64,000 nucleotides of DNA from Tubulanus polymorphus (taxonomy: Eukaryota > Animalia > Nemertea), in NCBI RefSeq assembly GCF_964204645.1, contig NC_134035.1, positions 7,162,451-7,226,450 of the forward strand, written 5' to 3'. Below the pieces are notes generated by a model. It searched no databases. It saw nothing but the letters and a program-made list of their open reading frames with translations, and had not been told where the DNA came from. The number at the start of each line of letters is the position of its first letter. The first letter of the stretch is position 1. Shown here in pieces: positions 8,975 through 19,122 of the stretch. The position numbers were made by a program, and so were the translations under genes.

Positions 8975-11900
8975 TCAAAGAATGTTACATGTTTTTGACT
9001 TTTTCGGTGGGTCGTTTTGTTTGGGTGGAGCTGGTTGTTTCACATTATTTTGCTGCGCATTGTTACTAGACACATTGTTGAACTGTGGAGTTTCCAGAAG
9101 TTTATCATTGTCCATATCATGGCTTTCCTCTGGCTTTTCCTTGACAGGACCTTTGGTGGATGGATTTGTAGCTTCGGGTTCTGTTACTGCCATTGCTTCG
9201 CGTGGTTTAGACACGATTGGAGATTCCTTGGATTCCTCTGTAACGCTGGGCTCCGGATTGTCCGTTGATTCCTCGAGAGGGGCCTTGGAATCTTGGGCAT
9301 CATTTTTGGCATCCGTTTTCTCGTCAACCGCTGCGCTCGAATCCTGGGGATCGTCCGCATATATTCTCAATTTTTCGAACAGTTGATCGAATGAATTTCC
9401 TGTCCAAGTTTCTTGAACATTTTCTTCGTGAGCAAAATCTATATAAAGCAACTCTGTGAATACCATGCTCATAGGACCGCCCGGTGGCCATCTTGTATCT
9501 TCTAACAATAAGGGAATAATCGGCTTCTTCAAGGCGTCGCACAGTGAAACCTCTTTACGACAATTTGCTGATTTGGAATATGTTTCAGTGACACACGATA
9601 CAACTACTCGACAGTTTCTAATTCCGCGGTCGATTTTATCGTACAGTGAGTCGCCGCCTCCCATCTGATAGATATCCATCCAGCAATGAAATCCTAGTTC
9701 AGTCAATCGGCGATACAGCCGTTTAATCTGAGGCTGTTTACCCCACTGGTAAGATATGAACACTTGCGCTGCTTCGGGCGGACTCTCCGCTGGAGATGTT
9801 ATCTGTAATATAGAACCATTCAAAAAGTCGTGAAGGATGACGCACCATAGGTTTCGATGAGAATTTACGACATATTCGAAATCAGATTCTAAATTTCATG
9901 TGTTAACCTGATATGTATACCTGATTCGATTTCGTCTTCTGATCTTCTCGAATGGGAAGAATTATCTCCTCCGGCTCGGGTTCCCACCAATTTCTGTACT
10001 CTATTCGATAGAAATGCGAATCAACATGATACACGGGGTGGATGGAGTCAATAGTTTTTTTTTAGTGTTTAAGCGCGGTACCTACCAGGATCGACAATTT
10101 CTTCTTCGGGCATTATCTTATTGAAACTGAGCTGCATGAGTAGTTCACTGAATTTCTCATCGTGCCAATTCCTTTCCCCTCTCCCCAGCGATCCCTTCCT
10201 CAGGTGCATGCTGATATACAGATATTCGCCGAATATGGGCCCCATTGATCCAGCTGGTGGCCACTGCACTCGCTCTAGTAGAATCGGGATGATGGGCTTG
10301 CCCAGATTGACAGCCAGGTTCACCTGAAAGACACAATTGTCCCCAGACACAGTGAGATCTCGAGTCTATGTACGTGCATTCTAGTAGGAGAATTTCACCC
10401 TATATACCAAAAGCCCGGGATTGGCATTTAATTCAAACTTGCAGAATAATATTCGATTCAATTCAATATTTCATATCTTAGATATTACGTTGTAAATCAT
10501 ATGATACACATGATATTTGAATTCGTAAATGAAGCACATTCGACGGTTGTTACCTCTCTGATACAATTTGGAGATTTCGCGTATTTCTCTGTAACGCAAC
10601 AAACGACGACTTTAGCTGCCCGAATTCCTTCGTCTATTTTGGCGTAGAGTTTATCGCCCCCTCCCATCTGACCGATGTCCATCCAACACTGAAATCCGGC
10701 CATTAGCAAATGCTTGCGAAGTAGCTTCACCTCTGGTTGATGGCTCCACTGGTAACTGAGGAAGACGGGTGGAGGCGAGGCATACTCTGGAGCCTCTTCG
10801 GTCACGACGTCCTCTGTATTGTCAAATATGTTATCTTAACTGCATGTTGTTTAAGGCTGTATGAAGCACCGTTATAATATTCAATATACAATTTTTATTG
10901 GTACCGGTACAGGCTTTGAGGTTTAATTTCTAGAGTATCGTGGTGGATTGTATTGTTTTTATGAACCAATCTCTCAATATCGCTACGGAGCGGTTGTAAC
11001 TTTTCGTCCAGCATTCGAGAAATCAATACAGAATACAAATGCGCTATCGGGTTTCTATCCGTTTCTAGTTGCCCATCGTGTATAAGGACAACCACGAGTT
11101 TGGAAACAGATAATGTAGATCTTTGCTTATCTCGAGAACTAGATTGGGTACAGTGTAACGTTTAAAGATGTGAGACCATTGCAAATACATGCTGCCGATT
11201 TTAATGTGTTTTGAATGTGTATGCTCCGAGTTAGGACAATTTAGTAGACTTACCAACATTTTTAAGAGCTTCCTCGATAACTATTGCAGCGTCCAATCTG
11301 TCGATTTCAACCAATATCTCCAAAACTGCATGGCTGGCTTCGCTGGTTTTATGCGTGGCAAACCATTCGCTAAGCAGTGACATACAGGGATCGTTTTGAG
11401 TCGCCCAGCCACGAATATCAGTCGGGTTATACCCGAGACGCTGGGCTAACAGGCGCCAGTCGTGTTCGGCTTCGGGGTTCAACAATGTTGAAACTTGTTT
11501 CGACCAAGCGGGTGCATTACTCACAGTCTACAAGAATTCACCATCAGAAATGGATATGGATCAAATATTGCTTTATTTTGTGTTAATTTTCTCGAATATA
11601 ATGTTATCCTCGACATCAAATGAAGCATTCTCTCCCTGCAGGGATCCGAACCTGATGACATCGAGACTCGCCCTGCCACACTAGCCCGAGTGCGCCGCTT
11701 ACATGCGAAGCTTAGATGGTGTCATTATTAGCCAATCAGATATGCCGTTTTATTCTAGTACGGGTTTTTCAATTTATAGTTTTTACGTAAAATTTGTCTC
11801 AGCGATTATACAATGGGCAATCTGATTAGTGCCGCAAGTTTTCCTTCAGCAAACCTGCGCACCCGGTCTAGTGTGGTAGGGTTTCATGCTGTTGCTGAAT

Positions 11901-17900: not shown

Positions 17901-19122
17901 CGCTGACCCATGAACTGTAGAAATCATCCGTGGTTTCCACGTGTTTCTCGGGTATGAATTCACGCATTAAGATCCTCAGTAATTTCTTAAGCTGTTCAGA
18001 ATCTAATTTGTCCTGCAGAAAACGTGGATATGATTCTATGCCACGGTAAAGCAATGGTAAAAAAAGCAAGTGACGTCTGATTTTGGTTTTATGAAAACTT
18101 AGGCTCGAAATTCAACATTAAATCAATTAGCAGCTGGACTGTAAATCAAATAAACGTTTAAAAGTATTCTTCGCACACAATCGTGGGAAAAAGCTGCATG
18201 AAAACGCATGAATAATGAGGGTTGTTTTTCTTCAAATTGTGGGTGTGTGCTTCTTCTTCATATTCAATGCCTTTGTTAACTTTAGTCATGAAAATGGTAT
18301 CAAGATGGTTTACGATAGATCCAGAAATTGTACATACTTAAAAATTTTGATTTTGGAAATTGTGGATTGTTTGTTCTTTATCGCTGTTAGCGGATGATTA
18401 CATCGCGTTTTCCATCATACCAGTATTTGTAGGAATACAGATTTCTTCTGGGTTTTTATTAGACCTATCAATATCTATTCACCGTCGCGACATACCTCCA
18501 TGTATTCTTTCATTTCAAAGCGTCGGAATATCTCGCGTATCAATTCTATATGGGTTGAACCCGGTCCAGCAGTAAGCAGGTGCACGACCAAATCATAGAT
18601 TAATGGGTAGAATTCGTCTGCAACCGAATCCTCAAAATCACTTTCAAATAGAAAACAATCTTTTATACGCGTTTGATATGCCGCCGATGCACGTCTGTCC
18701 TATGTTTTCATTTTTCTTACTTATCTGTAAGTCCATATCGCAGATTACAACTTAATGATCGTTAATGTAAAGCACTAGGCCTCTGATAGATCAGAACACT
18801 ATACATGTTTATATTCTAGAAACAATTCTAAGAATGTTCAGATTATCTTTAATTATTCATAAGCGATGACGATTATCATCGTTAAATTCAAACCTTACTC
18901 ATGTTTCGATTTAATCCATTGCAGAGCGGCAATGGCCATCGTCCCTGGTGGAGTTGAGTAGCGTGGATAACCTGGTGCACACACCGCATCTCGCAGGTAT
19001 TCTATCTCCCCGATTAGTTGTGCGCTCGAAACTTCTCGATAACCTTCCTCGTCGTCCCTAAGGAGATCTTCGTCATCCTCGCTCGCATCTTTAAAACGAT
19101 ACCGCGGAAGAAATTTCGCCAT
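8975..19122 (-). CDS. Multi-exon gene, about 1500 aa: ARM/HEAT-like helical region - coiled coil - Death domain - TIR - TIR - CaaX
   Basis: There are 22 GT-AG exons with consistent phases: 19122-18899, 18640-18496, 18012-17867, 17585-17417, 17310-17186, 16930-16771, 16517-16369, 15728-15605, 15488-15334, 14988-14865, 14789-14659, 14462-14315, 14070-13869, 13785-13649, 13271-13050, 12698-12469, 12323-12092, 11527-11254, 10813-10554, 10323-10086, 10000-9921, 9802-8975. They sum to 4503 nt (1500 aa plus stop). A minus-strand AATAAA lies near 8710. The C-terminal domains are clear; the N-terminal fold and the exon 7 boundaries are less certain. Confidence 0.85.
9360..9765 (-). other. TIR domain 2 (TIR_2-type)
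   Basis: VFISYQW...CWMDIYQMGGGDSLYDKIDRGIRNCRVVVSCVTETYSKSANCRKEVSLCDALKKPIIPLLLE. The Glu codon is at 9553-9551. Confidence 0.92.
10130..10770 (-). other. TIR domain 1 (TIR_2-type, split by one intron)
   Basis: VFLSYQW...CWMDIGQMGGGDKLYAKIDEGIRAAKVVVCCVTEKYAKSPNCIRE|VNLAVNLGKPIIPILLE. The Glu codon is at 10556-10554. Confidence 0.92.
11254..11527 (-). other. Death domain exon
   Basis: LLNPEAEHDWRLLAQRLGYNPTDIRGW...PCMSLLSEW...VLEILVEIDRLDAAIVIEE shows the Death-fold motifs DWRxLAxxLG, LLxxW and LxxIxRxD. Confidence 0.88.
11625..11940. mobile_element. Palindromic repeat with tRNA-like arms, copy 1 (intronic)
   Basis: The left arm ctgcagggatccgaacctgatgacatcg and the right arm ggtctagtgtggtaggg...aggttcgaatacctgc are inverted. 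The core is shared with 42705-42980 and 58603-58935. Confidence 0.65.
12092..12323 (-). other. Acidic coiled-coil exon
   Basis: Nine clean heptads: IDDLDTR VTTAENN VDQLTED VDKTKEE VDKLAVA AIVADER LDNLDDK VDELDEK VEEIDMK. Confidence 0.85.

What the first reader, a model, noticed from the sequence alone, without database searches (positions are those of the whole stretch)
8975..19122. Candidate undescribed innate-immune or cell-death executor: solenoid - coiled coil - Death - TIR - TIR - CaaX in one protein
Seen in sequence: a complete, phase-consistent 22-exon ORF of about 1500 aa. It has roughly 860 aa of Leu/Ile-rich helical sequence, a 9-heptad coiled coil, a Death domain, two TIR domains and a CaaX end. 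Established knowledge: MyD88 is DD plus one TIR, and SARM1 is ARM-SAM-SAM-TIR, where the ARM region autoinhibits an oligomerisation-activated TIR NADase. Inference: this protein applies SARM1-like logic with different parts. It would combine a solenoid sensor or autoinhibitor, coiled-coil and DD oligomerisation in place of SAM, twin effector TIRs and a lipid anchor. I do not recognise this architecture as a named family.
Basis: partly seen in the sequence, partly recalled or inferred. Interest (0 to 1): 0.9.

Follow-up and report, generated by a model that had tools for sequence, protein, structure and literature searches.

The report
Lipid-anchored Death plus twin-TIR protein
This is a real, expressed 22-exon ribbon-worm gene for a 1,500-residue protein (HEAT solenoid, coiled coil, Death domain, two SARM1-like TIR domains, prenylation signal); its architecture matches an invertebrate family already catalogued as ecTIR-DC family 6, for which I found no functional study.

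Summary
On the minus strand of 8975-19122, 22 GT-AG exons translate exactly to RefSeq XP_074660438.1. That entry is 'uncharacterized protein LOC141912910 isoform X1' of Tubulanus polymorphus, 1500 aa. One 4579-nt spliced contig in a public run links the helical exons to the Death and TIR exons.

The domains are:
- HEAT-type solenoid, residues 1-863
- nine-heptad coiled coil, 864-941
- Death domain
- TIR1
- a conserved Trp-Trp linker
- TIR2
- a Pro/Glu/Lys/Ser-rich tail ending KKSKTCNIL

Full-length relatives occur in molluscs, annelids, flatworms, rotifers, hemichordates and echinoderms. The literature describes this domain order as 'ecTIR-DC family 6', or lists members as 'MyD88-like'. I found no functional study.

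New here:
- Both TIRs are closest to SARM1 and bacterial NADase TIRs. Both keep the catalytic-position Glu in 46 of 46 sequences.
- The Death domain is p75NTR-like rather than MyD88-like.
- The CaaX box is present in 110 of 120 members.
- The solenoid diverges fast, whereas Death-TIR-TIR is 54-63% identical between phyla.

Best reading, with moderate confidence: a membrane-tethered, oligomerisation-driven twin-TIR NAD+-cleaving signalling protein with a variable sensor arm.

The parts
18899..19122 (-). Exon 1: start codon at 19122, aa 1-75. Acidic N-terminus and first solenoid helices.
   Evidence: The chain translates to P0198. Residues 43-59 align with conserved family columns (C48 in 64%, P53 in 57% of sequences), which favours isoform X1. 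No RNA joint was seen directly, because this exon lies outside the laid stretch.
18496..18640 (-). Exon 2: aa 75-123, solenoid. An alternative acceptor at 18617 gives RefSeq isoform X2.
   Evidence: X2 (P0001) starts at a different ATG (18989) in another reading frame.
17867..18012 (-). Exon 3: aa 124-172, solenoid.
   Evidence: tblastn of P0001; exact chain.
17417..17585 (-). Exon 4: aa 172-228, solenoid.
17186..17310 (-). Exon 5: aa 229-270, solenoid.
16771..16930 (-). Exon 6: aa 270-323, solenoid. A second AG lies 6 nt downstream, at 16924.
   Evidence: The end of this exon appears as the loose end of the X2 contig at 16519.
16369..16517 (-). Exon 7: aa 324-373, solenoid.
   Evidence: RNA joint 15727/16368 and the loose end at 16519.
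15605..15728 (-). Exon 8: aa 373-414, solenoid. It contains the near-invariant W413-K414.
   Evidence: RNA joints; conservation.
15334..15488 (-). Exon 9: aa 415-466, solenoid.
   Evidence: RNA joints.
14865..14988 (-). Exon 10: aa 466-507, solenoid.
   Evidence: RNA joints.
14659..14789 (-). Exon 11: aa 508-551, solenoid.
   Evidence: RNA joints.
14315..14462 (-). Exon 12: aa 551-600, solenoid.
   Evidence: RNA joints.
13869..14070 (-). Exon 13: aa 601-668. Canonical HEAT repeats.
   Evidence: RNA joints. The family profile matches CAND1, the 2DB0 HEAT protein and transportin HEAT repeats at profile positions about 554-797.
13649..13785 (-). Exon 14: aa 668-713, HEAT repeats.
   Evidence: RNA joints.
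13050..13271 (-). Exon 15: aa 714-787, HEAT repeats.
   Evidence: Contig piece 2193-2414.
12469..12698 (-). Exon 16: aa 788-864, end of the solenoid.
   Evidence: Contig piece 2415-2644.
12092..12323 (-). Exon 17: aa 864-941, nine-heptad coiled coil.
   Evidence: Contig piece 2645-2876. Heptad register. Parallel in-register trimer model: score 0.85 against a best control of 0.02.
11254..11527 (-). Exon 18: aa 942-1033, Death domain.
   Evidence: Pfam PF00531, 1.1e-11. The profile's best solved relatives are the p75NTR and NRADD Death domains. Contig piece.
10554..10813 (-). Exon 19: aa 1033-1119, first half of TIR1. It ends on the catalytic-position Glu1119.
   Evidence: Pfam TIR_2, 1.3e-18. 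Aligns to SARM1 E642. Contig piece.
10086..10323 (-). Exon 20: aa 1120-1199, second half of TIR1.
   Evidence: The loose end of the X2 contig at 10552 equals the start of this exon.
9921..10000 (-). Exon 21: aa 1199-1225, conserved Tyr/Trp-Trp/Pro linker between the TIRs.
   Evidence: Y337, W340 and P343 of alignment A2 are invariant or nearly so.
8975..9802 (-). Exon 22: aa 1226-1500. Holds TIR2 (Glu1309), a 124-aa Pro/Glu/Lys/Ser-rich tail, the polybasic stretch plus CaaX (KKSKTCNIL), and the stop codon.
   Evidence: Pfam TIR_2, 7.8e-24. Glu invariant in 46/46 sequences. CaaX in 110/120 relatives. Tail composition.

Best explanation
The locus is the single-copy Tubulanus polymorphus gene LOC141912910. 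Its architecture matches the invertebrate family that the literature calls ecTIR-DC family 6.

Shown:
- One mRNA encodes, in order: a roughly 860-aa HEAT-repeat solenoid, a nine-heptad coiled coil, a p75NTR-like Death domain, two SARM1-type TIR domains joined by a conserved Trp-Trp linker, a roughly 120-aa low-complexity (Pro/Glu/Lys/Ser-rich) tail, and a polybasic CaaX end whose last residue is Leu.

Inferred mechanism:
- The protein is geranylgeranylated. The polybasic stretch helps hold it on the cytosolic face of a membrane by a long flexible tether.
- The coiled coil makes it a constitutive parallel oligomer. A trimer was modelled.
- The fast-evolving solenoid is the regulatory or sensing arm. 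It either binds a ligand or partner, or holds the effector part in check.
- On activation, the Death and TIR domains cluster into a higher-order assembly.
- The twin TIRs each keep the catalytic-position Glu and the BB-loop glycines. They then cleave NAD+, either depleting it or producing ADP-ribose-type signals.
- The Death domain recruits Death-fold partners.
For: Gene and transcript:
- Exact identity to RefSeq isoform X1.
- A single spliced 4579-nt contig.

Solenoid:
- AF2 pLDDT 89.5, with Foldseek top hits RanBP5, importin-13, CAND1 and SF3B1.
- The family profile hits HEAT proteins at 7.7e-7 to 7e-6.

Coiled coil:
- Heptad a/d pattern.
- Trimer model score 0.85 against a best control of 0.02. 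The mark was reached by 21 of 30 proteins solved as pairs of one chain and 0 of 23 solved as single chains. Runs agree in at least 98% of contacts and pLDDT is at least 93. The calibration used two copies, not three.

TIR type:
- The best solved relatives by sequence profile are SARM1 (1.2e-6), PdTIR, AbTIR, Cat1 and BtpA. No TLR, IL-1R or MyD88 TIR reaches E <= 0.01.
- By fold, the best are SARM1, SPARTA TIR-APAZ, AbTIR and C. elegans TIR-1.
- Glu1119 aligns to SARM1 E642.
- That Glu is invariant in 46/46 sequences in both TIRs, inside an invariant Y-x-x-S-x-N-C-x-x-E motif.
- The QMGGGD BB-loop is also invariant.

Anchor:
- Cys at -4 in 110/120 family members. The last residue is Leu in 85, Ile in 14, Val in 5.
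- A mean of 3 Lys/Arg occur in the preceding 12 residues.

Variable arm and constant effector:
- Paralogues within a species are 29-39% identical (group medians) in the solenoid and 76-88% in Death-TIR-TIR, Ptychodera's near-identical paralogues aside.
- Between phyla the figures are 21-25% and 54-63%.

Expression context in relatives:
- An ecTIR-DC 6 gene is highly expressed in gills, as are TLRs, in Loripes (PMC6836662). In Mytilisepta family 6 expression is elevated in gills (PMC5549309).
Against: - No enzymatic, localisation or interaction data exist for any member, as far as I could find.
- The Trp four residues before the catalytic Glu (SARM1 W638) is an invariant Asn in both TIRs. SARM1 R569 and R570 are replaced by invariant Gln and Trp. 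The pocket therefore differs from proven NADases.
- The AF2 model of the C-terminal half has pTM 0.36, so it says nothing reliable about how the two TIRs sit together.
- Autoinhibition by the solenoid rests on analogy only. No similarity to the SARM1 ARM domain was found.
- Coiled coils often score high in complex predictors, and the stoichiometry is not established.
- No immune-challenge expression data exist for this species.
Confidence: 0.5

Rival explanations
1. It is a non-enzymatic scaffold adaptor, a MyD88-like or sorting-adaptor reading. The TIRs only bind receptor or adaptor TIRs. The Death domain nucleates a Myddosome-like complex with Death-domain kinases. The prenyl anchor places the protein at the membrane, as PIP2 binding does for TIRAP and for Drosophila MyD88.
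For: - Death plus TIR is the MyD88 combination.
- Members are listed as 'MyD88-like' in PMC9334734, and a sea-urchin member is deposited under that name. PMC4346834 groups oyster Death-TIR genes as 'MyD88-like'.
- Lipid targeting is typical of TLR sorting adaptors. PMC7075850 notes the C-terminal localisation domain of arthropod MyD88.
- The Loripes family-6 gene and TLRs are both highly expressed in gills (PMC6836662).
- The active-site Trp is missing.
Against: - Neither TIR has the Box 2 RDxxPG motif or the Box 3 FW motif that mark TLR, IL-1R and MyD88 TIRs (motifs as defined in PMC7075850).
- No TLR or MyD88 TIR appears among solved relatives at E <= 0.01, while SARM1 and bacterial NADase TIRs do.
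- The Death domain matches p75NTR and NRADD (7.5e-8) far better than MyD88 (0.009).
- An invariant Glu in both TIRs across several phyla is hard to explain for a pure scaffold.
- Aplysia has a canonical MyD88 beside these genes (PMC9334734).
Confidence: 0.3
2. It has a non-immune role, for example neuronal or developmental cell-death or NAD+ homeostasis signalling. This would parallel vertebrate SARM1 in axon degeneration and p75NTR. The solenoid would then be a metabolic or protein-interaction sensor rather than a pathogen sensor.
For: - The closest solved relatives of the parts are SARM1 (TIR) and p75NTR (Death domain).
- Very high conservation of Death-TIR-TIR (54-63% between phyla) and single-copy status in Tubulanus suit a housekeeping signalling role.
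Against: - Tandem paralogue expansions with strongly diverged solenoids occur in molluscs and in Dimorphilus.
- Expression is high or elevated in gills in bivalves (PMC6836662, PMC5549309).
- Both features are more typical of immune gene families. No tissue data exist for the nemertean.
Confidence: 0.15
3. It is a gene-model artefact: two neighbouring genes, a solenoid gene and a Death-TIR-TIR gene, have been joined by prediction.
Against: - One spliced contig crosses from solenoid exons 7-16 through the coiled coil and Death domain into TIR1. Its length accounts for the whole CDS.
- The same full-length architecture recurs in more than 100 proteins from several phyla.
Confidence: 0.02

Closest known systems
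ecTIR-DC family 6 (Gerdol et al. 2017, Dev Comp Immunol 70:145, as described in PMC6836662 and PMC5549309)
   Same: [quoted passage not shown] It is cytosolic and invertebrate-only. Bivalve proteins of this architecture are full-length homologues of the window's protein (E about 1e-180, 76-98% coverage of the N-terminal 1100 residues).
   Different: Nothing architectural. The defining paper is not in the held library, so assignment rests on the published description, not on its sequence set. In the papers I could read I found no mention of the conserved CaaX box, the coiled coil, the SARM1-type TIR character or the p75NTR-like Death domain.
SARM1 / C. elegans TIR-1 (ARM-SAM-SAM-TIR NADase)
   Same: - An N-terminal alpha-solenoid, then an oligomerisation module, then a C-terminal TIR.
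- The TIRs are the nearest solved relatives by sequence and fold.
- Shared with SARM1: the catalytic Glu, the Tyr in strand A, the BB-loop Gly, and the GK-x-I-(I/V)-P-I ... W-P motif.
   Different: - No SAM domains. A coiled coil and a Death domain stand in their place.
- Two TIRs, not one.
- A roughly 860-aa HEAT solenoid with no detectable similarity to the SARM1 ARM domain.
- A C-terminal prenyl signal instead of an N-terminal mitochondrial targeting sequence.
- SARM1 W638, R569 and R570 are not conserved.
MyD88 (including arthropod MyD88 with a C-terminal lipid-binding region) and TIRAP
   Same: A Death domain combined with TIR, and membrane targeting by a lipid-directed C-terminal element.
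   Different: - The TIRs lack the Box 2 and Box 3 motifs.
- The Death domain is closer to p75NTR and NRADD.
- There are twin TIRs, and a large solenoid and a coiled coil are added.
p75NTR / NRADD Death domains
   Same: They are the best solved sequence relatives of the Death domain (7.5e-8 and 1.5e-4).
   Different: Those are the cytoplasmic tails of transmembrane TNFR-superfamily receptors. Here the Death domain sits inside a cytosolic multidomain protein.
Polybasic CaaX proteins of the Ras/Rho type (K-Ras4B, Rap1, RhoA)
   Same: Lys-rich stretch, then Cys-aliphatic-aliphatic-Leu at the very C-terminus, after a flexible linker.
   Different: No GTPase domain is present. Prenylation of a TIR protein is not described in the papers I could read. 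That is a statement from my own knowledge and limited searches.

Membership tests
ecTIR-DC family 6 | Long N-terminal ARM-like helical repeat region | tested here: met
   AF2 solenoid of 46 helices with pLDDT 89.5. Foldseek and profile hits to HEAT/ARM proteins.
ecTIR-DC family 6 | Central Death domain followed by two TIR domains | tested here: met
   Pfam Death and two TIR_2 domains, in that order.
ecTIR-DC family 6 | Cytosolic: no signal peptide or transmembrane segment | tested here: inconclusive
   Only a Kyte-Doolittle scan was run. The maximum is 1.64, on a charged solenoid helix. No dedicated predictor was run.
ecTIR-DC family 6 | Sequence membership in the set defined by Gerdol et al. 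2017 | not testable with these tools
   The paper is not held. Bivalve proteins with the same architecture are full-length homologues.
MyD88 | TIR with Box 2 (RDxxPG) and Box 3 (FW) | tested here: not met
   Neither motif occurs in TIR1 or TIR2. Motifs as defined in PMC7075850.
MyD88 | Death domain plus a single TIR; Death domain of the MyD88 type | tested here: not met
   There are two TIRs. The profile hits the p75NTR Death domain at 7.5e-8 and the MyD88 Death domain at only 0.009.
SARM1 | Tandem SAM domains between the solenoid and the TIR | tested here: not met
   No SAM hit in Pfam at E <= 0.1. A coiled coil and a Death domain occupy that place.
SARM1 | ARM domain homologous to the SARM1 ARM domain | tested here: not met
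   No SARM1 chain appears among the profile hits of the solenoid at E <= 10, nor among the top 50 Foldseek hits.
TIR NADases (SARM1, bacterial and plant type) | Catalytic Glu in helix C | tested here: met
   Glu1119 aligns to SARM1 E642. Glu is invariant in 46/46 sequences in both TIRs.
TIR NADases (SARM1, bacterial and plant type) | Trp four residues before the Glu (SARM1 W638; the AbTIR and plant equivalents are from my own knowledge) | tested here: not met
   It is an invariant Asn in both TIRs.
TIR NADases (SARM1, bacterial and plant type) | NAD+ cleavage activity | not testable with these tools
   Needs a biochemical assay.
CaaX-prenylated proteins | Cys at -4, two mostly aliphatic residues, then X at the C-terminus; conserved in relatives | tested here: met
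   The C-terminus is CNIL. 110/120 relatives have Cys at -4, and X is Leu in 85 of them.
CaaX-prenylated proteins | Actual lipid modification | not testable with these tools
   Needs a labelling or localisation experiment.

The most novel reading that the evidence does not exclude
ecTIR-DC 6 proteins are an ancient bilaterian class of cytosolic innate immune receptor, kept in Spiralia and Ambulacraria and not seen among the chordate or ecdysozoan hits returned. In this reading:
- A diversifying HEAT solenoid directly senses pathogen or danger ligands.
- Sensing releases a prenyl-anchored, coiled-coil-trimerised twin-TIR NADase.
- The enzyme's products or NAD+ depletion, together with Death-domain recruitment, trigger cell death or inflammatory signalling.

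This would be a second animal TIR enzyme system beside SARM1, built on an NLR-like 'variable sensor, constant effector' plan.
Probability: 0.25. Interest if true: 0.8.

Novelty: new member of a known kind. Interest (0 to 1): 0.45.

Why it matters
To my knowledge, SARM1 is the only animal TIR enzyme that is well understood. Whether animals have other NAD+-cleaving TIR signalling proteins is an open question.

This family is widespread in marine invertebrates, including species used in aquaculture and as models. Its Death-TIR-TIR core is 54-63% identical across phyla. It keeps the catalytic-position Glu in both TIRs and carries a conserved prenylation signal. Yet I found no functional study of any member.

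The features assembled here turn a catalogue entry into a set of direct experiments: NADase assays with Glu mutants, tests of the prenyl anchor, and tests of the oligomeric state.

For this particular gene, the result is that it is a correctly annotated, expressed, single-copy nemertean orthologue, not a new architecture.

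Tried and rejected
- **My own gene model.** A splice-site plus codon-score dynamic programme over-split the gene into 30 exons and cut through TIR2. I dropped it in favour of RNA joints and the RefSeq protein.
- **Model A.** This used the donor at 18972 and gave 1466 aa. 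It is in frame but is not the RefSeq form, and it removes residues that align with conserved family columns.
- **Pfam on single solenoid exons.** Nothing significant.
- **Self-joined protein.** I sent no self-joined spliced protein to any search tool. Searches used exon references or the stored database proteins P0001 and P0198. Exons were joined only inside local scripts, to check frame and identity.
- **Sequencing runs.** The look-up of sequencing runs found no run on record as RNA. X2 was recognised as RNA or cDNA only from its spliced contig.
- **Coverage limit.** Only 6 kb could be laid, so exons 1-5 and 21-22 have no direct joint evidence, and exons 6 and 20 are touched only by the contig's loose ends.
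- **SARM1 ARM similarity of the solenoid.** Not found.
- **Gerdol et al. 2017.** Not held.
- **Literature searches.** Searches by accession and for 'MyD88-like protein L1' found only the Aplysia catalogue.
- **Intron repeat.** ARAGORN found no tRNA in the repeat-rich intron.
- **Upstream ORF.** The 252-aa ORF at 19957-20715 has no Pfam match.
- **C-terminal AF2 model.** It gave domain folds but no trustworthy inter-domain arrangement (pTM 0.36).

Full report
**What is there**

The finding lies on the minus strand. ORF listing and direct reading show a start codon at 19122 and a TGA at 8975-8977, with coding-looking blocks between them. Pfam on single exons, given by reference, finds:
- a Death domain in 11254-11527 (1.1e-11);
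- the first part of a TIR_2 domain in 10554-10813 (1.3e-18);
- a complete TIR_2 in the last exon (7.8e-24).

The protein ends in CNIL.

**Transcript evidence**

One read-laying run of 6 kb was allowed, and I placed it on 10540-16539. Run X2 holds a single 4579-nt contig at depth 47.7. Its pieces and joints, all CT..AC on the plus strand (GT..AG on the gene strand), reproduce these exons:

| Exon | Coordinates |
|---|---|
| 19 | 10554-10813 |
| 18 | 11254-11527 |
| 17 | 12092-12323 |
| 16 | 12469-12698 |
| 15 | 13050-13271 |
| 14 | 13649-13785 |
| 13 | 13869-14070 |
| 12 | 14315-14462 |
| 11 | 14659-14789 |
| 10 | 14865-14988 |
| 9 | 15334-15488 |
| 8 | 15605-15728 |
| 7 | 16369-16517 |

- The contig's loose ends equal the end of exon 6 and the start of exon 20.
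- 1022 nt of the contig lie upstream of exon 7 and 1169 nt lie after exon 19. That is what the full coding sequence plus about 76 nt of UTR requires.
- Run X1, at 0.99 of sampled words, is unspliced DNA.

The solenoid exons and the Death and TIR exons are therefore on one mRNA. For the remaining exons it is excluded by length arithmetic and by homology.

**Identity of the gene**

A HMMER search with the TIR2 exon returned many proteins of 1350-1570 aa with two TIR stretches. The top hit, P0001, is 'uncharacterized protein LOC141912910 isoform X2 [Tubulanus polymorphus]'. Its cluster mate P0198 is isoform X1, XP_074660438.1, 1500 aa. The 22-exon chain listed under 'parts' has GT-AG at every intron, spans 4503 nt, and translates exactly to P0198.

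Isoform X2 uses an acceptor 23 nt further in, at 18617. That shifts the frame, so its first 30 residues come from another reading frame. Residues 43-59 of X1 align with conserved columns of the family, so X1 is the canonical form.

The window is G000:C11:7162451-7226450. The solenoid has no second copy in this genome.

I joined exons only inside local scripts, to check frame and identity. No self-joined protein was sent to any search tool. Full-length searches used the stored proteins P0001 and P0198.

**Domains**

- *Solenoid, residues 1-863.* With a 42-sequence family alignment, AlphaFold2 gives 46 helices, mean pLDDT 89.5 and pTM 0.72. Foldseek against the PDB returns long HEAT-repeat proteins first: RanBP5, CAND1, importin-13 and SF3B1, with probability 1.0 and E from 2.5e-7. 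The family profile hits an archaeal HEAT-like protein (2DB0, 7.7e-7), CAND1 (7e-6) and transportin. SARM1's ARM domain does not appear in either list.
- *Coiled coil, residues 864-941.* Nine heptads, with Val/Ile at the a positions and Leu/Ala at the d positions. Three copies are modelled as a parallel, in-register bundle. The score is 0.85 against a best control of 0.02. The mark was reached by 21 of 30 proteins solved as pairs of one chain and by 0 of 23 solved as single chains. Runs agree in at least 98% of contacts and pLDDT is at least 93. The calibration held two copies, so the stoichiometry stays open. The profile also matches trimeric coiled coils such as P22 gp26, Lpp and reovirus sigma-1.
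- *Death domain.* The best solved relatives are p75NTR (7.5e-8) and NRADD. MyD88 reaches only 0.009.
- *TIR domains.* By sequence profile the nearest solved relatives are SARM1 (1.2e-6), PdTIR, AbTIR, Cat1 and BtpA. No TLR, IL-1R or MyD88 TIR reaches 0.01. By predicted fold the nearest are SARM1, SPARTA TIR-APAZ, Hydra TRR-2, AbTIR and C. elegans TIR-1. Neither TIR has the Box 2 RDxxPG or Box 3 FW motifs that mark TLR and MyD88 TIRs (PMC7075850).
- *Catalytic-position residues.* Glu1119 aligns with SARM1 E642. In 46 family sequences the Glu is invariant in both TIRs, inside an invariant Y-x-x-S-x-N-C-x-x-E motif. The QMGGGD BB-loop is also invariant. Against catalysis, the Trp four residues before the Glu in SARM1 is an invariant Asn here, and SARM1 R569 and R570 are Gln and Trp.
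- *The TIR duplication is old.* TIR1 and TIR2 are 51% identical to each other. Each is 57-70% identical to its orthologue in other phyla, so the duplication predates the split of those phyla.
- *C-terminal anchor.* The last 124 residues are rich in Pro, Glu, Lys and Ser and end in KKSKTCNIL. Of 120 family members with both TIR motifs, 110 have Cys at -4. The last residue is Leu in 85, Ile in 14 and Val in 5. About three Lys/Arg lie in the preceding 12 residues. That conservation makes a geranylgeranyl-type signal very likely functional.

**Family and distribution**

Full-length homologues cover 97-98% of the N-terminal 1100 residues at E values of 1e-150 to 1e-199. They occur in gastropods, bivalves, annelids (Owenia, Dimorphilus, Helobdella), a flatworm (Macrostomum) and bdelloid rotifers. 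They also occur in hemichordates and echinoderms, which have a solenoid about 330 residues shorter. No chordate, ecdysozoan or cnidarian protein was among the hits shown. The lists were capped, so this is not proof of absence.

Almost all members are named 'uncharacterized' or 'Death domain-containing protein'. One sea-urchin entry is 'MyD88-like protein L1'.

| Comparison | Solenoid identity | Death-TIR-TIR identity |
|---|---|---|
| Paralogues within a species (medians of four groups; Ptychodera's near-identical paralogues: 83% and 96%) | 29-39% | 76-88% |
| Tubulanus against other phyla | 21-25% | 54-63% |

The pattern is a variable arm on a constant effector.

**What the literature says**

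[quoted passage not shown] 2017.
- PMC5549309 reports elevated ecTIR-DC 6 expression in mussel gills.
- PMC9334734 lists the Aplysia member LOC101850562, which is P0008 in my hits, as MyD88-like with an Armadillo-type fold.
- PMC4346834 groups oyster Death-TIR genes as MyD88-like.
- The defining paper itself is not held.

I found no functional work on the family. In the papers I could read I found no mention of the CaaX box, the coiled coil, or the SARM1-type character of the TIRs.

**Mechanism**

The architecture, the single transcript, the conservation pattern and the structural assignments are shown. The rest is inferred:
- prenyl plus polybasic membrane tethering through a flexible tail;
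- constitutive oligomerisation by the coiled coil;
- regulation or sensing by the solenoid;
- clustering of the Death and TIR domains on activation;
- Glu-dependent NAD+ cleavage by one or both TIRs, with the Death domain recruiting partners.

The main rival is a non-enzymatic adaptor. The missing Trp and the Death-TIR combination favour it. The TIR type, the absent Box motifs, the Death-domain type and the invariant Glu all speak against it. The two readings are not mutually exclusive.

**Verdict**

The gene is real, expressed and already annotated. Its architecture is that of a catalogued but functionally unexplored family, so it is a new member of a known kind rather than a new architecture. 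The interest lies in the family-wide features found here, which make an 'animal TIR enzyme beyond SARM1' hypothesis directly testable.

Noticed in passing
window 11540-11940 (intron between the coiled-coil and Death-domain exons): This is a high-copy repeat. Contig word depth is 1200-3000 in X1 and X2, against about 26-48 for the flanks. Many short contigs end there. ARAGORN finds no tRNA.
   Followed up: partly
window 18617-18640 and 18899-18989: RefSeq isoform X2 pairs the donor at 18899 with an acceptor at 18617. That shifts the frame, so its predicted N-terminus (30 aa, from an ATG at 18989) is read in another frame. It is likely a non-productive or minor splice form.
   Followed up: partly
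window 16924-16930: Two acceptor AGs lie 6 nt apart at the start of exon 6. They add or remove two Ser residues. RefSeq uses the upstream one.
   Followed up: no
window 10554 and 8975-9802: The intron inside TIR1 falls directly after the codon of the catalytic-position Glu1119, whereas TIR2 is encoded without any intron.
   Followed up: no
window 19957-20715 (minus strand): A 252-aa ORF lies just upstream of the gene and has no Pfam match. It may be a remnant of a mobile element.
   Followed up: partly
G000:C2:30243723-30244484 and G000:C2:28290593-28290961: Other TIR-coding loci exist in the same genome. One has a segment 62% identical to TIR1 and a second TIR-like segment about 400 nt downstream, which may be a separate twin-TIR gene without the solenoid.
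   Followed up: no
window 11330, 12224, 12238, 16270, 16387 and others: The sample behind runs X2-X4 differs from the assembly at single bases in exons and introns. These are ordinary polymorphisms (table 3).
   Followed up: no
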